Assembly: GCA_001655205.1 (NCBI GenBank)
Contig: LPNZ01008651.1
Coordinates: 1-38,645 of the forward strand
DNA: 38,645 nt
DNA from: Lenisia limosa
Lineage: Eukaryota > Protista > Breviatea
Direction of reading: 5' to 3'
Under the pieces are notes generated by a model that was not told the DNA's origin, ran no database searches, and worked only from the letters and a program-made list of their open reading frames with translations. A program made the translations under genes and the position numbers. How positions within the stretch are numbered: the stretch's first letter is position 1; the number at the start of each line of letters is the position of its first letter. This document shows, one piece after another, positions 4,901-31,592 of the stretch.

Positions 4901-7900
4901 ATATGTATATGATAGTATATATATCAATATATATGTGCTACCGGCCAAAAACCCCACCATTAAATCATTTTCCCGCCATTAAATCATTTTTCCGTCAAAT
5001 TATCTTTTTGGTGATTGTTTACAATGTTACTCCAGATGTTTTCTCAGTTTCTGTTTTTGCTTGTTAATAGTGAATAGAAATAGCAAGATCCTATTGTAAC
5101 CAAAATAATTAGAACAAAATATATCAAAAAAAAAAATACCAAATAAATGCACAAAAACAACCACTATCAATTTTTGCGTGGCTTCTTTGGAGCTGGAGTT
5201 GCTTTTTTCTTTGTTTTAGTCTTGAGGTTGTCTTCAAACTTGTTCAAACCTCCGACATCCAGACAAGTTGCGTGGTTGACAAATAAACCTGTTTTTGTTG
5301 ACAGTTTACACTTTCTCACAGGTTTTACCTTCAGCTCATCAATCCAAAATCACTATGAGAGATATGGTACAATTCAATCACCAGATTTACAACGTTTCTT
5401 ACCTGTCCCTTTTCCAGTACAACAGCTCTCTGTCCAGGCTTGATAAAATCAGAATGTTCTTCATCATCATCAACTCTTGCAATTGCTTGTTGAGCAAGGG
5501 CCTGTTCAAAGGTGATGTCGTTCATTTTTTTACTTCTTGCACATCAGTTCGAAACAGAGTGACTTCTTCGGTAGTTGACTTCAATAAGAATTTGTCCCTT
5601 AGTGTAGACCTTGGGATATTTACAGCGTATCCGCTGTGGGTTGGAAAAACCAAAAAAGAAGATAGACCATATGGCGAATTTGGTGGTAAATTTAAAAAAT
5701 CGGTAGCGGCAATATCAACATAGGTTTCGATCTCTTGAGGGGAGAGATACTCTTTCCAGTTACCGTTTTCAACATCCATATCCCTCAACTTGTTTTCATA
5801 GTAGTTGGGTTTGGTTGGTCTCCCTTTCTAAAAAGGTGAGAAGTTATCAAATTGGTCGTAAAAAACATCCTAAAACGGGAACAAAAAGATTCAGAAATGT
5901 GCGGTGGCGATGCAAAAAAAGCACCTCTCTGCTTTCCGCAATATGGCTTATTTTTTATGCGGTAAATTTCTACAATCATATATTTGACCANNNNNNNNNN
6001 AAAACGGGAACAAAAAGATTCAGAAATGTGCGGTGGCGATGCAAAAAAAGCACCTCTCGGCTTTCCGCAATATGGCTTATTTTTTATGCGGTAAATTTCT
6101 ACAATCATATATTTGACCAAAAATGATGGGGACAGGGGGTGAAAAATTTTTTTAAAAAAAATAAATAGAGACCCGGGTACCCGGGTAAAAATAAAATATC
6201 TTTCTTACTGTTACACACCATATATTGTCCAATATCCACTATCAAAACTATTTCGTCTGAATGTTGTTCCAGTTCCATAATTAAAAAAAGTCGATGATAA
6301 AGGAAAATGAAGGGGGGAAAAAAAAGGTCACTTAAATATCCCCGGGTACCATTTTTTGAGGTACCCGGGTAAAAAAATTAAAAACTCCAAAACGGATGTT
6401 TTGAACGCATTTCCCAAAAAATGTCATTTTTGGTGATTTAGCCCGTCTCGAATATTTTGACTTTGCAAAAAAAAACACCCACTATTTCAGATATTTCCCC
6501 CCAATTCTAACGTTTACAACCTAAAAAATATTATATTTTGATATTTTTGTATAGCTGTAGGTTGTTCTAGTTCCAAATTTAATATTTAATGGCAAACGAG
6601 CAAACATATGATTAAAATAGTGTGAAAAAAGCACCAAAAATGAATTAATGGCGGGAAAATGATTTAATGGTAGGGTTTTTGGCCGGTAGCATAAGGCGAC
6701 CCCCCTGAGTGCGAATTCCAACCTGAGTGCGAATTTTTTAATTTTTTTAANNNNNNNNNNCATATACACTTCAAACCTTTTGTATTTCGTCTGCATGTTG
6801 TTCCAGTTCCATAATTAAAAAAAGTCGATGATAAAGGAAAATGAAGGGGAAAAAAAAAGGTCACTTAAATACCCCCGGGTACCATTTTTTGAGGTACCCG
6901 GGTAAAAAAATTAAAAAAATTAAAAACTCCAAAACGGATGTTTTGAACGCTCATTTCCCAAAAAAATGTCATTTTTGGTGATTTAGCCCGTCTCGAATAT
7001 TTTGACTTTGCAAAAAAAACACCCACTATTTCAGATATTTCCCCCAATTCTAACGTTTACAACCTAAAAAATATTATATTTTGATATTTTTGTATAGCTG
7101 TAGGTTGTTCTAGTTCCAAATTTAATATTTAATGGCAAACGAGCAAACATATGATAAAAATAGTGTGAAAAAGCACCAAAAATGTATTAATGGCGGGAAA
7201 ATGATGTTTAATGGCGGGGTTTTTGGCCGGTAGCATGTATGAATTATTGCTCAAAAGTTGATGTATAATTACAATTAATTATTTTTTTTAAAAAAAACCA
7301 GACTGAAATGTAAGCGGAAAACAGATTGTTCACCCCATATTTGCTATACCCAACTACTCTATGGTCTTAAGTGATCAAAACACAAGCACATTTACAATTA
7401 CAATTCCCTCAAACAGAAGCAATGCCTTGGAATCTCCTGTCCATGAGGTGTAACACGTGATACTCTTCAGCAATCTTTTGGGAAATAATAGTCATTTGTG
7501 CACCTAAGGAGTAATTGGGTAGAAGATGAGTATTAATAATATTATATCAAAAGTAGCCTTCACTGACCAGTATCAACGAATACAGTCAGAGGTTTATTGT
7601 TTAAAGTGGCGGAGACGTAGAGCATAACGATCTCGCCAAAGAGCTCAGGGTTTTCTTCCATTGCCTGAAACATAGGAACGTTGTATCAGATATTGAAGCA
7701 CACTATTCTTTTTTTACATCAAATTGAATATCGATATGATCTCTTCCAATTTTGTCTGTTTTACTCCCTTTTCAAATATGTTTACTCTCTAATCAAAAAG
7801 ATAATTAACATTAATCAATTCAACCTATATATATGTATATATCTTCAATTTTTAATCCGAGAATATGTTAGTTTGATAAAAACAAGCATATCCACAGACC

Positions 7901-9329: not shown

Positions 9330-10783
9330 ATGGACTGTAAGTGGTTAATTTTTAAGATTTACCAGAATAGTTCATTTTGGGGAGTATGGCGAGAGGGATG
9401 ATGAGGTTATTTTTGATGTGTATGCATCACCGACATCCCCTCCTTCACCAACACTCAAAACAAGACGAGGAACTAGAAGAGAGTTGACTCCTGAACCAGA
9501 GGTGGCAGGCAGTCCGATGGACATCTTTTATGGTGGGTCCGCATCCCGAAGTCCCACTCCAGATGACATTGTCGTTGTCAAGCGAAAGTGAGTTGGAGGG
9601 AGTTGTTCACCAATTTCAGCTTTCTCCACTAGATTTGCTATATGACATCGTTTCGCCCATTTGCTTTTGTTCATGAAGAAATGGAAAATATGTTAACTTT
9701 GTAGCTCATGTTCAGCAGCTGGTGGTACTGCTCTCATGACTCCAATAACTGCTCTTGATGTGAAAAGTTCTCAAACAACCCAGGAGCTTGCTGTTCCTTC
9801 CTCACAAACTAATGACCATATTATTCCTGAATCGCAGGTCTCAGTTGACCCAAGGTACTTAATTGATTCACCTGATGAAGAGTACAATGCAAATCGTAAG
9901 CTTAATTCTGGGTTACTTTTTAGGACCACGCACAAGGCAATCTGGTAAGATAAAGGAGAGAGGCCCCAAAACAGTTTGTGTATTCTTAATAAAATAGCCA
10001 CAAATATCTTTGAGCTTTAGTAAACCTAAAGTTATTAAGCAATCTTTAAGGAATGCAAGGAATACAAAGAAAAAAGATGATAGGAAAGTGCAAACCACTT
10101 TAACCTTTCTTCCTAGGTTTGTTTATGACCATTGCGTTCTTATCACTTTTTAGAAAAGAAAAAACTCCTCCACCAACCGCCACACGTGAAGAACTGTTGT
10201 CCCCTTCAGAGTCACCAGAGGGCAAAATTGGGGCAAACTCCAGAGTATGTTCTCAAATAATTTTGGATCAGGAATGCCTGAAAAGTCAGTCAAAGCATTT
10301 GGTGGAGCCGACAGATTTCGTTTATTCAGATGATCTTAGTCAAGCCAGACCAAGGCGGTTGTTTTCTTCCCAGTCCAACGCCAGAGATGGAACCAATGAG
10401 GAAGCACCTTTAGAAGGAACTTATTTTGAGACTCTTCCCAAGCGAAGAAGATCAACAGCTCGAGAGGGAACTAACCCAGAGGAGCTTGTAGTCAAGCATA
10501 AAAACCTGACTTTTCTTGAGATAACAACACCTGAAGCAGTGGTTGGCGGTGTATAATATATCTTGTAACCTTCTTGTAGTTAATAAATAAACGAAGTACA
10601 CTTCCGAAAGAAGACGTTATGTCCCCTGTATTGCCTTCCCAGCAGGAAGTAAGTTTAATTTTCCATTGACTTATCACAGGAATCCCAATGTTCAAGCTAT
10701 CACGACTTTGAGTACGTGCCCAGTGATTTTGCAATGGTTTGAAAGGGTTCCAACTCTAGATTGTAACGTATATAAAAGCATAG
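9330..10783 (+). CDS. Hypothetical Ser/Thr-Pro-rich, low-complexity multi-exon protein
   Basis: ATG 9330, then exons FHFGEYGERDDEVIFDVYASPTSPPSPTLKTRRG..., MTPITALDVKSSQ..., PQISLSFSKPKVIKQSLRNARNTKKKDDRKVQTTLTFLP and EKTPPPTATREELLSPSESPEGK... flanked by GT/AG. 3' end uncertain (10556 or later). Confidence 0.55.
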
Positions 10784-10944
10784 CACATCCATCTAATATC
10801 AGTTTAAAATCTTCTATTTTGGTGGTCATCCAATCATATTATTTTCACACATGTGACACCTATGTGCCTCCTTGGGATTTTCCCTTTCACTTTTTCGAAC
10901 CTGCCCTAGGGAACGAGGAAAAAAAACTCGTGGTTTTCTTATAG

Positions 10945-11490
10945 GAAACATCGAGGCCGTTTTCCTGAAAAACTCAAATTTTCCAAGAGTTCTGGGGGTT
11001 TCCCTTTGAAAGGGACAACGAAACCGAGCAGCGAGTTATGGTCTGAAAAGGGTGTTTAAACAAAAAAAAAAAACCAGACACTTCAATCAACACACAAAAT
11101 ATCAAAAGAGATCAATTTGTCTATCAAAAACTCTTAAATTTTCATCCATCTAGGTAACTATTGTTCAGGAATATTAATATATATACATTAGTTTCAATAT
11201 TGAGCAATTTTTTTCGACATCAGTCACTCTTCAAGGACAATAGTAAGCAATTAAATATTAAAGTACAAAATTAGTATTGAAAGTAGAGCAGCGAACGGAA
11301 ACGGAAACGGCATGTTGTGAGCGGAAGTCTCTTTGCTATTCCTCCCTCGAGTAGGTGCGAACCGTTTTAGGCCCTCGAACACAGCTCTCAAGAAAACTGA
11401 TCTTTTCTTACGCATCAACTTCTTCTTGGTTCACTCGAATCTCAATTTTCTCTCGATTGTAGACTCTAGGACCGTCGAGCACGGGGCACT
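10945..11490. repeat. Dispersed repeat, copy 1 (homologous to 35065-35430)
   Basis: Shared blocks: AGTCTCTTTGCT(A/G)TTC(C/T)TCCCTCG, AAGAAAACTGATCTT (11390-11404 = 35343-35357), CACTCGAAT(C/A)TCA(A/G)TTTTCTCTC, GAGCA(C/T)GGGGC, plus a weaker upstream GTTTTCCTG..GGGGTTTCC block. Confidence 0.75.
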
Positions 11491-12794
11491 ACTTTTTCGT
11501 TATTTTCCTTTGGGATTTTCACTTAAAAATATCTTGGAAGTCTAGAGTTACGGGATTCCTGTCAAGTCTAGAGTTTACGGGAATAATCTTTTTTTTTTTT
11601 CTTTTTTTTTTCTTTCTTTTTNNNNNNNNNNNNNNNNNNNNNNNNNNNNTTCTTTTTCTTTTTGTTTTAATGAAAAAAAGAAGACAAAAAAAGATATGAA
11701 AATTCCAGGGAACAATGACAAAAATGAAAATACTAAGGGCACATGATTGTAGTACAAGAATATTAAATAAATCAAGCAGATATCTTTTTTGCTAAACAAA
11801 AGCTGTAGTCATAGCGAAGTATCAGAGTAAGAAATAACTCAACTCTTTGTTTTTTCATCCAGTTTTAATTTAATACTAGACTCCTCAGGTTGAGTATCCA
11901 CTTGTTGTATGATGATATTACCGTATTTTTGAGTCGAAACAAATGTCAATGAAGTATTATTTGACCTCTTAGACACAAACCGCTGCATTATGGAACCATC
12001 GGGTTCAAAGTGATAATGATACTGATGAAACTAAATCCGATCTTCAAAAGTGCACTCAGTATTCTGAAGAGGTTTGCATTGTAAATTTTATCTAATCTTT
12101 CAGGCAATAAAAAAATGGACAACAGGCCAAATTAAGGCTTGGAGTAATCGCTTGGAATTGAAAAATAATTTTCTTTTTCACTTTAATGGTACGAGTTACA
12201 GTTGCGCTCCAATGTTTCTTCAGATGTTCTTGAGGTACCCACTTTAGGACCATTTTCTTCCGAAGAAACATCAAATTTCATTAGTAACGTTTGTTTGGTG
12301 TGAACTGTCACTGTAACATCAATTATACAATAGCTATTCAACAATCCCCATCTATCAGCATAACCATCTTTCAAACGATAATTTGACCTCCTACTAAGTA
12401 TAATATAATACTTCTCAACATATTAATATAAGATACAATATTGTATCTTTGGGCCTTTTCACATGTGTGAACTATCATTTTCCACGTGACTTGATACCTC
12501 ATATACACCCATGGGATTTCTTTTCGGCATCATTTCCCCTGGGACTTTTGTCATTTTTACCCAAAAATGATGTTTTCCCCTGGAAAGAAGATCATTTTTT
12601 AGTCACAGTATCACAATAAAAAAAAATTGCTGATCGCTAAAATTGAAGATCAGGGATTGGTGAGGAGGGAGTGAAACCGCATTTTGGCAGTATTTTGTAC
12701 ATGGTTACATTGAATTCTTAAAGCGGGCCAAAAGCATATATTTTACGCGCCATTTTTTTGTGGTCAAATGAACATTTCATCTCATTTGATTATA

Positions 12795-22884: not shown

Positions 22885-25800
22885 TTATAGAATTTGACAG
22901 CACCCCTTCTTCTTCTTTTTCTTATTTCCTGAGAGAAGCTCCTCAGTATCAGGGCCTGTTTCTTCTTCGGGTGGTGGAATGTCCACTCGCTTCTTGTCTC
23001 CTGCAAAAGTAAACAAGGCAAACAAAAAACAATAAAGGTTAAATTTTTCAAACAATGATTTAAGACCCTCTCTCACCAAGCATATGAGGCGATGACTCAA
23101 CACCTCCAAGGTCTCCCCACCCAACATCTACCTTGCGACCGCCTCGCATAATGTAACCCGAGGGTTTAACCTCAAACTGAATCCAGTTATAATACAGAGG
23201 GAAAATGAAATTGATTGACACTGCACAAAGAATGCCTGGACCACCTCTGGCAACAGACCTTGGCCTTGCCAATGGGAGCAACAGCAGCCGGGGCGGCAGC
23301 TGGGGTATCTACCATGGCCACAGGTGCTAACGTCGGCTCCTCAGCAAGCTCCGGCTTTTTACGGTTGGCAATAATGATACCAAGGGCAGCTAGGGAGGGG
23401 GGGGGGGNNNNNNNNNNNNNNNNNNNNNNNNNNNNNNNNNNNNNNNNNNNNNNNNNNNNNNNNNNNNNNNNNNNNNNNNNNNNNNNNNNNNNNNNNNNNN
23501 AAGTCCTCCAAGGGCAGCGAGAATGAGGTAGGGCAGGAAGAAGAGCACCCATGGGAAATCCTTCTCTTCGGATTCGCAACCTGAAATAATAAGTGCTTCA
23601 CCACTATGCCAGCCAGGTGGTCAAGATACTTAAGTGTATGATAAGCTGACTACATAGGAGTCAAGATACTTCAGTGTATGATAAGCTGACTACAAAGGAG
23701 TCAAGATAGTTTTCGAACCTTGACACACGATGGTGACCGAATGAAGGACTGGGCCACGGGTGTACTGTTCACGATGCAGTTCAACACGAACTTGGATATA
23801 GCGACCTTGGATCTCCTAATACTATCATTCCAAAACATCCAAGATTACTATCATTTGACAACATCCAGACCATCTTAAGTTACACTTGGCTTACAGTGAT
23901 TCTTGTTTCATTGACTGAGGCGGGGAACACGTCAGGATCATCAGAAGCAGCAACACGAACAACCACCTCTTCATCCTCCGCAAGCTTGGAATCCTCTTGA
24001 AGGTCGGCGTCAATCTAAACTGCATGACCACAGGTCTACAATCAGCTCTTGCAACTACAACCCTCCCCCTCCTACCAGAACCTGTGCCCACCAAGCACCC
24101 TCATTTCCTTCGCCCAAGTCGTAGACGATAATCCAGGAGCCAGAAGTGGGTGATGCGGACGCGCCAGCACCAGTCAGATCAGAGTAACTATACATCGAGC
24201 TGGAAGGTCAAGAATAGTGCAACAAAAGGTGTTTTTACAATAAATGTAAGTATATTCAGAGACGTACATACCCTGGGAGGATAGGTGAAACCCAGTCAAC
24301 AGCTCCTTCACCCCGATTAAGATCAGGATTAATTCGCATAATAGTCCTAAGGGGTGAATAAAACTACAGGCCTAAAAGTATAAATGGCGCTTGAATAATA
24401 TAATAAAAAAAGATGTGTACTATATCAAAATTTATTTTTCTCAATCTCTCGATGGTGTCTCAAATGTCTATTGAATAGAATTGAGTTTTTTTTGGGAAAA
24501 TATTCACCATTGCCCAATATCAGATAGGGAGAGAGGAAGGGAGAGGGAGAAGGCAATAAAATATATAAAAACAGTTTCAGTTCCTACTTTGACCTGTAGC
24601 AAATGGCAAAAAGATAGCCATCCCTGTCAACAGACACGCCAGTTGGACCCTCTCCCCATTGTGTTTCTGTCGAATCGAATGGCTGTGGGGTGAGTAGGGG
24701 ACATTGAATAAGTGAAATGAACCATCTCAAGGATTTGGAGTGGCCTTACCGTGTATTTCAGCTCAATGTTGCCGATGTGTCTTCCAAAGGGGTTCGTGTG
24801 AGCCACAGTACGTACTCCGCTTCCTGCTGGGTCAATACTCAGTAGTCGCAATTGTGGTGGACCTGACGCGTACCAAGTGAGTGAGCAACCCAAACAGTGT
24901 TATCATGGTCAACAACACAGCCTTGGGCTGTAGCAAGGCCTTGGGCTCCTTCAAAGATCTCCATCTAATGTTCAATTATTTGAAATGTGAAGACTGAGCA
25001 CAATTCTAGAAAGACAAACGAGAGTCAACTCACATCTCCGGTCTCGTCTTCTCCACGAACACGCTCCGGATCGAAGCGGACCAGTGACATTTCGGGGTTC
25101 GAATATTTGGTTCCCCAAATGTGTCTACTACGCCCACTACACAGTGACAGAAGAATATCTTCCAAAAATAAGACGTTTCAATTTTCGAGTTTTTCCCTTA
25201 TTGATAATGAGACTGAATGAATGCACAATAAATCACGGGTGCTTACGTGCAAACACCGTAGATGCCATAACCTCTGTTGTCAACGGTCGTAGCCTCAGAA
25301 TTCGGAAGGTTGAGATCCCACATGTATAATGCTGAAACATTTAGATTCAAACGTTTTTGTAAAACACAAAAAAAAGATCCAATCATAATAAAATATAAAC
25401 CCGCTGCCAACATCCAGGGGCTGAGTAGATAGTTCCCTTCTTATCAGGGTCTAAACTCTTGAGGTAGACACCACCATAGCCTAAAATATCACGTGGCAGC
25501 ATTAATAAGAACATCATACGTTGAAAAAAAACTCTTAAATCAGAAAATTGGATCGGAGGCAAGACCATAAAGTAAAAGGGAATCAATTATTACCTCTTTC
25601 ACAATTGAGTAAATGGTGGTTATTAACAAAAAAACATATTTTATCTCACGGAAGGACTGTCAGAGTGACTTTCATACCGAGTCAATTATCCAATTATCTG
25701 AGAGCTTGCTTTAAGAAGATCCAACCCAACCTCCAGCAACTTGGACTCCATAGTCTTCAATTACTTCTCCTTCAGGGGACAAAACGCGGAGATGCTAGGA

Positions 25801-26648
25801 TGATGAGAATTGACTCTGATCACCAGGGGGAAACATAAGACCACCTTGAGAGAGCGACCCATGTAATAGACGTTGTTGTACTCGTCAATGGTAATATGGC
25901 GGATGTCAGTGTTGATAGAGGCATCATCCTTGTGGTAGAGAAGAATACATTCGTCTTCAGGTTCCTTGCCAGCCTCCCAGGGCATAATCTCATCAATTGC
26001 CTATATTGTGAGCATGTAACCAAAAATTAAGAAAACTCTCACTCTTGAAGTGTCAATGATTCCATTTCCATTCCTGTCGACGCATTGACCAGTCTCCTCC
26101 ATGCCAATCTTGGTCATGCTTCCCTCGGATCGGTTTCCAACCCAGCAATTGGCATTACTAAGAGGTAAAGTTAGAGCCTTTCTGGCAAAACAGGCTTCAG
26201 GAAAAAAGGGTTTTCAAATATCTAACATAGAAAAAGAACTATTGCTGTTTCGCCACCAACGAGTCAATACCGATGCGAGAAGGATTTTGAGCTCCACCAG
26301 GGGATGTTTTGTACATGGCAACAATTTTTGGATAGGGTCTACATGCCGTGCAAAGCTGAATAGGTCAGATAAGAAGGATATCGGAACAATTAAGCAAACC
26401 TTAGCAACATAGCCAGCAGACGAGACCTGATGAGTTAGTTCAGTTCATATTACTCAATAGGTACTTACAGGGATCCACATTGAGGTCAGAGACGGGGAGA
26501 GAGTAAGTCTAATTGATCCTGGTTGAAATTCATGATCCATGTTAACTGCAAGCCCCATATAGAAATCTTCTTGCGTTGTGTAGGTAATTGGCCGCAATCC
26601 AAAGCAGAATGTAAAGCAAACAAAAAAAAGAAGCAGTTCCCTTGCCAT
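22885..26648 (-). CDS. Type-I membrane protein: signal peptide, bacterial-type beta-propeller and beta-sandwich ectodomain, TM helix, cytoplasmic tail ending in polybasic CaaX
   Basis: MARELLLFFVCFTFCFG-LRPITYTTQEDFYMG...YKTSPGGAQNPSRIGIDSL...CWVGNR...CVDRNGNGIIDTS...EPEDECILLY...VDHDNTVWVAHSL...GPTGVSVDRDG...MRINPD...YSYSDLTG...GSWIIVYDLG...VVVRVAASDD...GRYIQVRVEL...PVLHSVTI...FPWVLFFLPYLILAALGGL[gap]AALGIIIANRKK...FEVKPSGYIMRGGRKVDVGWGDLG|GDKKRVDIP...KKKKKKGCCQIL*. About 14 or more GT-AG introns; one N gap within the TM region. Confidence 0.8.
23621..23708. repeat. 40-bp tandem repeat (about 2.2 copies), intronic
   Basis: TCAAGATACTT(A/C)AGTGTATGATAAGCTGACTACA(T/A)AGGAG at 23621-23660 and 23661-23700, plus a partial third copy. 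Confidence 0.9.
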
Positions 26649-26872
26649 CTTGCTGAGATGAGAAGGNNNNNNNNNNNNNNNNNNNNNNNNNNNNNNNNNN
26701 NNNNNNNNNNNNNNNNNNNNNNNNNNNNNNNNNNNNNNNNNNNNNNNNNNNNNNNNNNNNNNNNNNNNNNNNNNNNNNNNNNNNNNNNNNNNNNNNNNNN
26801 NNTGCGGAGAGAGAGCACACAAGCGAAAGAACGACACACAGGCAGGATTCGACCCAGAGGATTGTCTCTCAA

Positions 26873-31592
<4,720 letters not shown>

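What the first reader, a model, noticed from the sequence alone, without database searches (positions are those of the whole stretch)
23700..26648. Intron-riddled eukaryotic gene whose ectodomain looks like a bacterial giant-surface/RHS-protein N-terminal propeller
Seen in sequence: collinear motifs TYTTQEDF, NPSRIGID, WVGNR, CVDRNGNGIIDTS, EDECIL, VWVAHSL, GPTGVSVD, MRINP...GAVD, YSYSDLTG, GSW...DLG, VRVAASD, GRYIQV.VEL, PVL.SVTI. From memory, the same series (TYT..DF; NPSRTTVD; CIDRNGNGVIDTS; AEDECII; VWVAHSL; GPTGVAVD; NVMRIDP; YxYSDMTG; GRYLQV) occurs in Vgb-lyase-like propellers at the N-terminus of cyanobacterial, planctomycete and myxobacterial RHS/surface proteins. DRNGNGIID is a Dx[DN]xDG-like Ca2+ loop. 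Inference: an old lateral transfer, domesticated with many spliceosomal introns, a signal peptide and a TM anchor. Propeller plus beta-sandwich plus TM is an integrin-alpha-like layout, possibly convergent.
Basis: partly seen in the sequence, partly recalled or inferred. Interest (0 to 1): 0.8.

Follow-up and report, generated by a model that had tools for sequence, protein, structure and literature searches.

The report
Bacterial surface propeller in protist gene
An expressed protist gene with at least 16 introns encodes a membrane-anchored surface protein whose whole outer part is a propeller-shaped module otherwise found on bacterial cell surfaces, so it was most likely taken from bacteria; this is a clear but not unprecedented case.

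Summary

The spliced ectodomain (residues ~20-522) aligns end to end with more than 1,800 bacterial proteins (E about 1e-72, 30-37% identity). It keeps 38 of the 51 invariant family positions.

An AlphaFold model of the nearest bacterial member (pLDDT 93) shows:
- a 7-bladed YVTN/NHL-like propeller;
- a beta-sandwich built from N- and C-terminal strands;
- a cysteine-flanked insert carrying the DRNGNGxxD loop.

All 36 secondary-structure elements of that model are matched in the window protein.

In bacteria the module sits on LPXTG, dockerin, T9SS or SLH anchors, or inside PKD/Calx-beta/VWA adhesins. I saw no RHS repeats and no N-terminal preference. The Pfam Vgb_lyase match is below threshold.

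The only other eukaryotic members found are diatom genes, which nest within bacteria. The window protein sits on a very long branch inside the same bacterial subfamily (100/100), but its exact position, the donor and the age of the transfer are unresolved (AU p = 0.06-0.09).

Horizontal transfer followed by domestication is well supported. The function, most likely a Ca2+-dependent surface binding module, is inferred. The scan had not noted this family before on other DNA.

The parts
26469..26648 (-). Exon 1: ATG at 26648, signal-peptide-like MARELLLFFVCFTFCFG, then TYTTQEDF (N-terminal strands of the beta-sandwich)
   Evidence: RNA contig piece 26467-26666; translation; highest hydropathy at residues 1-20; aligns with the bacterial mature N-terminus
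26400..26426 (-). Exon 2: 27-nt microexon (VSSAGYVAK), flanked by 42- and 44-nt introns
   Evidence: Joint 26355->26400 plus record arithmetic of the RNA contig; matches the bacterial 'VSTKGTAVK' strand
26261..26355 (-). Exon 3: ...NPSRIGID (blade 1)
   Evidence: Joints; alignment
26043..26157 (-). Exon 4: CWVGNR and QCVDRNGNGIIDTS (Dx[DN]x[DN]GxxD loop, first Cys of the conserved pair)
   Evidence: Joints; alignment; weak EF-hand_5 match, E = 0.24
25845..26000 (-). Exon 5: EDECIL (second conserved Cys), IRHITIDEYNNVYYMG blade
   Evidence: Joints; Pfam SBBP propeller repeat, E = 4.8e-4
25731..25794 (-). Exon 6
   Evidence: Joints
25412..25480 (-). Exon 7: GGYGG motif
   Evidence: Joints; invariant G-Y-G-G kept
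25247..25331 (-). Exon 8: LYMWD blade
   Evidence: Joints
25034..25136 (-). Exon 9
   Evidence: Joints
24874..24964 (-). Exon 10: AQGCVVD...VWVAHSL
   Evidence: Joints
24750..24823 (-). Exon 11 (follows a 50-nt intron)
   Evidence: Joint 24822->24873
24588..24682 (-). Exon 12: GPTGVSVD blade
   Evidence: Joints (donor GTAGGA at 24587)
24272..24346 (-). Exon 13: MRINP...GAVD (last blade)
   Evidence: Joints
24076..24199 (-). Exon 14: YSYSDLTG, GSWIIVYD (link and first sandwich strands)
   Evidence: Joints (donor at 24075)
23895..24014 (-). Exon 15: VVVRVAASD sandwich strand
   Evidence: Joints
23719..23815 (-). Exon 16: GRYIQVRVEL, PVLHSVTIV (last sandwich strands)
   Evidence: Joints
23521..23580 (-). 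Exon 17 (start): 12-residue stalk CQGCESEEKDFP, then hydrophobic WVLFFLPYLILAALGGL running into the N gap (23409-23520)
   Evidence: Joint 23577->23716; sequence
23259..23408 (-). After the gap: end of the membrane helix (LAALGIIIA) and start of the cytoplasmic tail (NRKKPELAEE...GKAK). Reading frame inferred.
   Evidence: Sequence; the RNA contig extends 456 nt beyond 23580; the splice to the last exon is not resolved
22885..23000 (-). Probable last exon: ...DKKRVDIPPPEEETGPDTEELLSGNKKKKKKGCCQIL-stop (polybasic plus CaaX-like end). Inferred.

Best explanation
This is a genuine, transcribed protist gene with at least 17 exons. It encodes a type I membrane protein made of a signal peptide, one ~500-residue extracellular module, a 12-residue stalk, a membrane helix and a short cytoplasmic tail. 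The extracellular module belongs to a very large, functionally uncharacterised bacterial family of cell-surface modules. In that family a 7-bladed YVTN/NHL-like beta-propeller has its N- and C-terminal strands packed into one beta-sandwich, and blade 2 carries a Cys-flanked insert with a Dx[DN]x[DN]GxxD loop, probably a Ca2+ site. The gene most likely entered the protist lineage by horizontal transfer from a bacterium. It then gained a eukaryotic signal peptide at the position of the bacterial one, a membrane anchor in place of the bacterial anchors (LPXTG, dockerin, T9SS, SLH), and many spliceosomal introns, and it diverged strongly. Inferred function: a Ca2+-stabilised binding (adhesion or receptor) module held close to the plasma membrane, probably recognising a polymer on bacteria or particles. 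Shown here: the gene structure, its expression, the homology, the fold of the family, and its bacterial surface contexts. Inferred: the direction of transfer, Ca2+ binding, and the binding function.
For: Gene structure and expression: polyA RNA contig with 16 GT-AG joints. Exon GC is 0.49 against intron GC 0.37. Neighbouring genes are eukaryotic.

Homology: E = 5e-69 to 1e-72 and 30-37% identity over residues 20-525 against bacterial proteins. 38 of 51 invariant and 76 of 115 columns conserved at 90% or more are kept, including the Cys pair and the D-x-N-x-N-G-x-x-D loop.

Family size and taxa: more than 1,800, 1,457 and 1,329 hits in three searches. Named members come from Myxococcota, Chloroflexota, Acidobacteriota, Planctomycetota, Actinomycetota, Desulfobulbaceae, Patescibacteria and Clostridia.

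Fold: AlphaFold model of P0104:36-545 with pLDDT 93 and pTM 0.86. Best solved match is 1L0Q, the YVTN propeller plus PKD of an archaeal S-layer protein (Z = 35). 193 of 196 secondary-structure residues are covered by the window protein, with most indels in loops.

Surface context in bacteria: an LPXTG-type end in P0104, dockerin in L027, T9SS, SLH, PKD, Calx-beta, VWA and NIDO partners.

Rarity in eukaryotes: the only named eukaryotes are two diatoms, and these nest within bacteria. An exon-5 HMMER scan of 1.8e9 cluster representatives found only the window's own ORF. A metagenome scan found no close relative.

Tree: the split between the P0104-type subfamily including the window protein and the other subfamily has support 100/100.
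Against: The window protein has a 3.5 substitutions-per-site branch and a deviant amino-acid composition. Its place inside the subfamily is an unresolved polytomy. The AU test does not reject placing it outside the subfamily (p = 0.089) or with the diatom clade (p = 0.057). The family tree is unrooted.

The search for eukaryotic orthologues was weak. The spliced protein could not be submitted as a query, so only single exons and bacterial proxies were used.

The structure was predicted for a bacterial proxy, not for the window protein. No member of the family has a tested function. Thirteen invariant positions are changed (for example E67M, T82I, T83G, N394S), so any ancestral activity may be altered. 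The membrane helix and tail cross an assembly gap.
Confidence: 0.7

Rival explanations
1. Same origin, different function: the module is a surface-tethered enzyme (lactonase- or lyase-like, as in SGL, Vgb or 6-phosphogluconolactonase propellers) that acts on extracellular bacterial or matrix compounds.
For: Bacterial relatives pass the Pfam SGL threshold on one blade region (42-47 bits against a cut-off of 26.3) and weakly match Vgb_lyase. Lactonases and Vgb are among the structural matches. The family has many invariant charged or polar residues. Unchecked notes of this scan report other membrane-anchored bacterial-type lyases in the same genome.
Against: The Vgb_lyase match is below the curated cut-off. 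The best structural match is a non-enzymatic S-layer propeller. The domain partners are adhesin-type (PKD, Calx-beta, VWA, NIDO, dockerin). Invariant E67 and N394 are replaced in the window protein. No family member has a shown activity.
Confidence: 0.25
2. The window gene and the diatom genes derive from one acquisition (or a eukaryote-to-eukaryote transfer), not from independent bacterial transfers.
For: Both fall in the same P0104-type subfamily. The AU test does not reject the window protein joined to the 11-row diatom-containing clade (p = 0.057).
Against: The free tree keeps them apart. Window protein plus Discostella alone is rejected at p = 0.02. Identity to the diatom proteins (28-30%) is lower than to the bacterial ones (33-37%). 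The Discostella copies are almost intronless, so no intron positions are shared.
Confidence: 0.1
3. The family is ancestrally eukaryotic, or shared vertically since before the eukaryote-bacteria split, or moved from eukaryotes to bacteria.
For: The tree is unrooted, and the long window branch could in principle hold the root (where the midpoint root falls on it).
Against: Thousands of members occur across many bacterial phyla, against a handful of eukaryotes. The diatom genes nest deep inside bacteria. The window protein groups with one bacterial subfamily against another at 100/100.
Confidence: 0.04
4. Artefact: bacterial contamination or a chimeric assembly rather than a eukaryotic gene.
For: The source is a mixed (metagenomic) culture, and the scaffold has N gaps on both sides of the gene.
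Against: Sixteen spliceosomal introns are removed in a polyA RNA contig. The gene lies on one 7.6-kb DNA contig. Eukaryotic genes are on the same scaffold. No bacterial sequence exceeds 37% identity.
Confidence: 0.01

Closest known systems
Uncharacterised bacterial surface-propeller module annotated 'streptogramin lyase / Vgb family / NHL repeat / SMP-30-like' (e.g. P0104, the L007 Myxococcus adhesin, the L027 Phycisphaerales dockerin protein)
   Same: Collinear homology over the whole ~490-residue module (E about 1e-72). The same motif series, the Cys pair, the DRNGNGxxD loop, and extracellular display next to an anchor.
   Different: 30-37% identity only, and 13 of 51 invariant residues are changed. 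One loop (NAGGADDSGGVST) is deleted. Anchoring is by a eukaryotic membrane helix and tail instead of LPXTG, dockerin, T9SS or SLH. The gene is split by at least 16 introns.
YVTN beta-propeller plus PKD of the Methanosarcina mazei surface-layer protein (PDB 1L0Q)
   Same: Best solved structural match (VIA Z = 35.1, rmsd 2.0 over 283 residues). It is a 7-bladed propeller on a cell-surface protein followed by a beta-sandwich domain.
   Different: Only 14-18% identity. The sandwich here is built from both N- and C-terminal strands. The large Cys-bridged Ca-loop insert is absent from 1L0Q. Family membership was not shown.
Virginiamycin B (streptogramin B) lyase Vgb (PDB 2Z2N, Pfam PF24684)
   Same: 7-bladed propeller with a weak blade-level sequence match. 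This is the source of the automatic annotation.
   Different: Vgb is a ~300-residue cytoplasmic enzyme. The Pfam score for relatives is below the gathering cut-off. Vgb has no sandwich, no insert and no secretion signal. Catalytic residues were not tested.
Diatom Trailins: bacterial 'choice-of-anchor A' surface domains acquired by horizontal transfer and used as adhesive proteins (bioRxiv 10.1101/2023.03.06.531300)
   Same: The same kind of event: a bacterial surface module that occurs with alternative bacterial anchors is transferred to a eukaryote and exposed extracellularly.
   Different: Unrelated domain (CAA, PF20597) and a different host. Trailins are secreted adhesive-trail proteins with experimental localisation. 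Here nothing has been tested experimentally.
Integrin alpha subunit
   Same: The overall layout: a 7-bladed propeller with Dx[DN]x[DN]GxxD-type loops, a beta-sandwich, a single membrane helix and a short tail.
   Different: No FG-GAP or integrin Pfam match on any exon. Different propeller family. A single sandwich formed with the N-terminus. No evidence of a beta partner. An analogy only.

Membership tests
Bacterial 'Vgb-like/SGL/NHL'-annotated surface propeller module (no dedicated Pfam model for the whole module) | Significant collinear homology over the whole ~490-residue module | tested here: met
   blastp/tblastn E = 5e-69 to 1e-72 over residues 20-525; 36.9% identity over 463 aligned positions to P0104
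Bacterial 'Vgb-like/SGL/NHL'-annotated surface propeller module (no dedicated Pfam model for the whole module) | Conserved motif set (TYT..DF, NPSR, W..NR, C.DRNGNG..DTS, DEC, GGYGG, VWVAHS, GPTGV.VD, RI[DN]P, Y.YSD.TG, G.W, GRY.QV, PVL) | tested here: met
   38 of 51 invariant and 76 of 115 columns conserved at 90% or more are kept; 13 invariant positions are substituted
Bacterial 'Vgb-like/SGL/NHL'-annotated surface propeller module (no dedicated Pfam model for the whole module) | Fold: 7-bladed propeller plus a beta-sandwich built from N- and C-terminal strands | tested here: inconclusive
   Shown for the bacterial proxy P0104 (pLDDT 93). For the window protein it is only inferred: 193 of 196 secondary-structure residues align. 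The spliced protein could not be submitted for folding.
Bacterial 'Vgb-like/SGL/NHL'-annotated surface propeller module (no dedicated Pfam model for the whole module) | Extracellular display (signal peptide plus anchor) | tested here: met
   Hydrophobic N-terminus directly before the TYT motif, and a hydrophobic helix 12 residues after the module. By sequence only; localisation was not testable.
Virginiamycin B lyase family (Pfam PF24684) | Score at or above the Pfam gathering cut-off (50 bits) | tested here: not met
   No exon matches. Single-module bacterial relatives score 23-46 bits.
Virginiamycin B lyase family (Pfam PF24684) | Vgb catalytic and Mg2+-binding residues | not tested
   No reliable residue-level alignment to Vgb was made (12-16% identity in structural matches)
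RHS / YD-repeat proteins | RHS/YD repeats in the protein or in its bacterial homologues | tested here: not met
   No RHS Pfam family appears in the domain lists of about 300 homologues or in the three giant ORFs scanned
Integrin alpha | FG-GAP repeats or integrin-alpha domains | tested here: not met
   Ten of the 17 exons were scanned and none matched. The bacterial proxies match SGL, NHL and Vgb_lyase only.
SMP-30/gluconolactonase/LRE-like (Pfam PF08450 SGL) | Score at or above the gathering cut-off (26.3 bits) | tested here: inconclusive
   Bacterial relatives pass on one ~60-residue stretch (37-47 bits). The window exons tested singly give no hit, and the spliced protein could not be scanned.

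The most novel reading that the evidence does not exclude
The protist uses a module taken from bacterial adhesins as its own receptor for bacteria, either prey or the epibionts it is reported to carry if the genome is indeed the breviate Lenisia limosa. Ca2+-dependent capture at the surface would be coupled to the cortex through a lipid-modified polybasic tail. That would be a host-side adhesin of bacterial origin mediating a eukaryote-bacterium partnership.
Probability: 0.12. Interest if true: 0.7.

Novelty: new member of a known kind. Interest (0 to 1): 0.4.

Why it matters
The gene is a clean, transcript-verified example of a complete bacterial surface module rebuilt into a eukaryotic type I membrane protein. 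It carries a new signal peptide, a membrane helix, a tail and at least 16 introns. It also draws attention to a very large bacterial family (thousands of members in many phyla, with many anchor types) that has no full-length Pfam model, no solved structure and no tested function, and that automatic annotation calls 'streptogramin lyase'. If the host is a bacterivorous, epibiont-bearing anaerobe, the protein is a candidate for host-bacterium contact. Horizontal transfer into anaerobic protists and into diatoms is already well documented, so the interest is moderate.

Tried and rejected
(1) An HMMER scan of 1.84e9 representatives with exon 5 alone found only the window's own 74-aa ORF and two low-complexity repeat proteins. 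Single exons are too short to reach the bacterial relatives.

(2) Pfam on single exons gave only a marginal SBBP repeat and a weak EF-hand_5 hit.

(3) An alignment of one bacterial module with all exons (A2) was unusable, because the exon fragments aligned to each other as propeller blades. It was not searched.

(4) A metagenome scan with exon-5 peptides gave 176 pattern matches, none confirmed.

Full-length work was therefore done offline (blastp, MAFFT, IQ-TREE) against fetched proteins, and the fold was taken from a bacterial proxy.

(6) The first gene model, built from GT-AG rules alone, missed the microexon and two donors. It was corrected from the RNA contig.

(7) Intron-position comparison with the Discostella gene was uninformative. 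That annotation fuses two tandem, almost intronless copies.

(8) The cyanobacterial loci carrying the DRNGNG motif (L012, L029) are not homologues. The motif also occurs in many unrelated proteins.

(9) Literature searches found no description of this family in breviates or diatoms.

(10) I did not verify the organism's identity myself.
Full report
**What is in the sequence**

The finding lies on the minus strand. I built a GT-AG exon model by hand and tested it against public reads.

Two runs hold the stretch. One is a DNA-like run with 100% of the sampled words. The other is a polyA 'metatranscriptomic' RNA-Seq run from 2016 with 38% of them.

Laying their contigs on 23521-26667 gave one 7.6-kb DNA contig covering the whole stretch without joints. 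It also gave one 2,086-nt RNA contig (depth 33.6) that skips 16 segments, all CT..AC on the plus strand, which is GT..AG on the gene's strand.

The RNA confirmed 13 of my introns as drawn, including the 42-nt and 50-nt ones and the weak GTTGGT donor. It moved two donors 6 nt downstream, so those exons end at 24588 and 24076. It also revealed a 27-nt microexon (26426-26400, VSSAGYVAK) between introns of 42 and 44 nt.

The corrected model has 17 exons up to an assembly gap and gives 543 residues. Exon GC is 0.49 and intron GC is 0.37.

The layout of the protein is:
- It starts at the ATG at 26648 with MARELLLFFVCFTFCFG, the most hydrophobic window of the protein.
- The TYTTQEDF motif follows immediately.
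- After PVLHSVTIV come a 12-residue stalk (CQGCESEEKDFP) and a hydrophobic stretch (WVLFFLPYLILAALGGL) that runs into the N gap at 23409-23520.

Beyond the gap the frame continues with LAALGIIIANRKKPELAEE... An ORF further on ends ...KKKKKKGCCQIL-stop at 22885. I could not settle the splice between these two, because the phases do not match at the obvious sites. The RNA contig does extend 456 nt past 23580.

The neighbouring genes are eukaryotic: PI3K C2 and kinase domains at 27.2-31.4 kb, a UBA domain, and RNase PH. Contamination and chimeric assembly are therefore excluded.

**Is the bacterial resemblance real?**

Single exons were too short to reach relatives. An exon-5 HMMER scan of 1.84 billion cluster representatives returned only the window's own ORF and two repeat proteins. 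Pfam on exons gave only a marginal SBBP propeller repeat and a weak EF-hand hit on the DRNGNG exon.

I then scanned one genome per prokaryotic species for the back-translated loop DRNGNG[IV][IV]D. tblastn of the spliced model against these loci gave collinear matches over residues ~20-520:

| Locus | Organism | Result |
|---|---|---|
| L007 | Myxococcus sp. | 35% identity over 487 aa, E = 5e-69 |
| L068 | Thermoanaerobaculia | E = 1e-33 to 1e-48 |
| L066 | Chloroflexota | E = 1e-33 to 1e-48 |
| L027 | Phycisphaerales | E = 1e-33 to 1e-48 |
| L011 | unclassified bacterium | E = 1e-33 to 1e-48 |
| L120 | Pyrinomonadaceae | E = 1e-33 to 1e-48 |

Weaker hits fell in other Myxococcota and Pseudomonadota.

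That recollection was therefore correct.

Only about 18 of the 120 motif-bearing loci are homologues. The two cyanobacterial loci are not among them. The loop by itself is a common motif.

**Size and nature of the family**

Three searches of the 5.8-billion-protein collection each returned more than 1,300 to 1,800 hits, with the candidate list truncated. The queries were a profile, the nearest standalone bacterial protein P0104, and the Discostella protein.

Names, where given, are 'streptogramin lyase', 'Vgb family', 'NHL repeat', 'SMP-30/gluconolactonase/LRE-like' or 'hypothetical'.

On single-module members the Pfam Vgb_lyase model scores only 23-46 bits against a cut-off of 50. SGL passes on one ~60-residue stretch. 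No Pfam model covers the whole module. A profile search of PDB sequences finds only NHL 'Pizza' designs, PknD and regucalcin, through single blades.

The bacterial contexts are those of surface proteins:
- P0104 has a signal peptide and ends in LPRTGG plus a hydrophobic segment and basic residues, a sortase-type anchor.
- L027 carries a dockerin.
- Others carry T9SS sorting domains, SLH, PKD, Calx-beta, cadherin-like, RTX or MopE domains.
- In giant ORFs the module lies in the middle, among PKD, CARDB and Big_3_5 (L007), Calx-beta (L068), or NIDO and VWA (L066).

RHS repeats were never seen, and the module shows no preference for the N-terminus.

**Fold**

AlphaFold2 on P0104:36-545 with a 65-row alignment gave pLDDT 93.1 and pTM 0.86. 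There are 28 strands between residues 32 and 384, which makes seven four-stranded blades. A large insert (residues 113-160) in blade 2 carries the DRNGNG loop and the two nearly invariant cysteines. Two N-terminal strands (7-10, 20-22) and five C-terminal strands (409-497) form a sandwich.

The best solved matches are all 7-bladed propellers:
- 1L0Q, the YVTN propeller plus PKD of an archaeal S-layer protein, leads (Foldseek E = 2e-12; VIA Z = 35.1, rmsd 2.0 over 283 residues).
- Designer propellers, N2O reductase, 6-phosphogluconolactonases, Vgb (Z = 26) and YncE follow.

The AlphaFold DB clusters that cover the whole module carry SLH, HYR, EF-hand or DUF4215 labels. Swiss-Prot holds no close relative.

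**Does the window protein fit the family?**

I added the spliced model to the family alignment offline. It keeps 38 of the 51 invariant columns and 76 of the 115 columns conserved at 90% or more. Kept features include the Cys pair, D-R-N-G-N-G-I-I-D, GGYGG, R-I-x-P and Y-x-Y-S-D-x-T-G.

It covers 193 of the 196 residues in the 36 secondary-structure elements of the proxy model (40% identical there). Most indels fall between elements. One loop (NAGGADDSGGVST) is deleted.

Substitutions cluster in blade 1 (T53Y, G62P, G66A, E67M, T82I, T83G), where two extra cysteines appear (LCTAC).

The fold of the window protein itself could not be predicted, because a spliced sequence cannot be handed to the tool. 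Fold membership is therefore an inference from homology.

**Eukaryotic distribution and phylogeny**

Only two hits carry a eukaryotic name. P0004 is from the centric diatom Discostella pseudostelligera, and P0250 is from the pennate diatom Nitzschia inconspicua.

The Discostella gene lies on a 161-kb contig between Rpb8, an AAA ATPase and a trypsin-like gene. Its annotated 1,005-aa product is a fusion of two tandem, almost intronless copies.

In a careful IQ-TREE analysis (LG+C20+F+G4 PMSF, 65 rows, 507 columns) the two diatom proteins fall in an 11-row clade (96/72). The other nine rows are unnamed metagenomic sequences. This clade nests inside a 21-row, otherwise bacterial clade (97/100).

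The window protein is only 28-30% identical to the diatom proteins, less than to bacterial ones. It has a terminal branch of 3.5 substitutions per site and a deviant composition.

It groups with the P0104-type subfamily against the other subfamily at 100/100, but it sits in a basal polytomy there. AU tests gave:

| Constraint | p (AU) |
|---|---|
| Window protein plus Discostella alone | 0.02 |
| Window protein plus Discostella and P0028 | 0.064 |
| Window protein plus the 11-row diatom clade | 0.057 |
| Window protein outside the subfamily | 0.089 |

The data favour an origin within bacterial diversity, separate from the diatom acquisition. They cannot name a donor, and they do not firmly exclude a shared eukaryotic origin.

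No orthologue or paralogue of the window gene was found, but those searches were weak.

**Mechanism**

Shown here: a transcribed type I membrane protein whose ectodomain is a single copy of a bacterial surface module held about 12 residues from the membrane.

Inferred:
- The DxNxNGxxD loop between two conserved cysteines is a structural Ca2+ site in an oxidising extracellular setting.
- The module binds a ligand. The partner domains in bacteria are adhesin-type, and the nearest solved structure is an S-layer propeller.

The main rival is a tethered enzyme of the lactonase or lyase kind. Support for it comes from the SGL and Vgb blade similarities, the many invariant polar residues, and unchecked notes that the same genome carries other membrane-anchored bacterial-type lyases.

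The integrin-alpha comparison is only an analogy of layout.

**Organism**

I did not establish the organism. Earlier follow-up notes of this scan call the genome the breviate Lenisia limosa. The run metadata (2016, polyA 'metatranscriptomic') are compatible with that, from my memory of the published culture. If this is right, the host is an anaerobic bacterivore with bacterial epibionts, which gives the speculative reading in the novel case. The literature searches found no description of this gene family in breviates or diatoms. A conceptual precedent is the diatom Trailins, which are bacterial 'choice-of-anchor' surface domains acquired by transfer (10.1101/2023.03.06.531300).

**Verdict**

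It is wrong or unproven in its details (RHS, N-terminal position, cyanobacteria, Vgb membership, age of the transfer, integrin likeness). This is a new member of a known kind of event. The scan had not noted this family before on other DNA.

Noticed in passing
window 26400-26426 (-): A 27-nt microexon flanked by 42- and 44-nt introns. It is spliced in the RNA contig and is easy to miss in gene prediction.
   Followed up: yes
window 23620-23699 (intron 16): A 40-nt tandem duplication at 95% identity (GTCAAGATACTT.AGTGTATGATAAGCTGACTACA.AGGA), with the start of a third copy at 23700.
   Followed up: partly
window 22885-23408 (-): The cytoplasmic tail appears to end in KKKKKKGCCQIL-stop, a polybasic plus CaaX-like end on a protein that already has a membrane helix. 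The splice between about 23259 and 23000 does not fit in phase at the obvious GT/AG sites, so an unseen exon or a different donor is likely.
   Followed up: partly
window 23380-23530: The sequences on the two sides of the 112-N gap look alike (gctgcccttgg on both sides), and the far side starts with a C run. The gap may hide a short overlap or a homopolymer problem, so the membrane-helix sequence is uncertain.
   Followed up: no
window 27210-31370 (+): A PI3K gene (C2 domain E = 7e-13, kinase domain E = 5e-21) lies head to head with the propeller gene. The shared upstream region holds the second N gap (26668-26802).
   Followed up: partly
L122 6001-12470 (Discostella pseudostelligera contig JALLBG020000286.1): The annotated 1,005-aa protein ACHAWU_005918 is a fusion of two tandem, almost intronless copies of the module (about 6001-7797 and 10560-12467), joined by a 3.3-kb 'intron'.
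   Followed up: partly
L106 4850-5353 (Candidatus Aenigmatarchaeota MAG): A partial copy of the module (tblastn E = 2e-15 to the window protein, E = 2e-21 to P0104) sits in an archaeal MAG, so the family may not be purely bacterial.
   Followed up: no
loci L001-L120: The back-translated DRNGNG[IV][IV]D loop occurs in more than 120 prokaryotic genomes, but only about 18 of the 120 fetched loci carry the module. It is a generic Ca-loop-like motif shared by unrelated proteins.
   Followed up: partly
Atlas search of L007:4900-6399: One related propeller cluster (61 members, Reg_prop/SGL/NHL) is labelled Viruses/Uroviricota, which hints at phage-borne relatives of this type of propeller.
   Followed up: no
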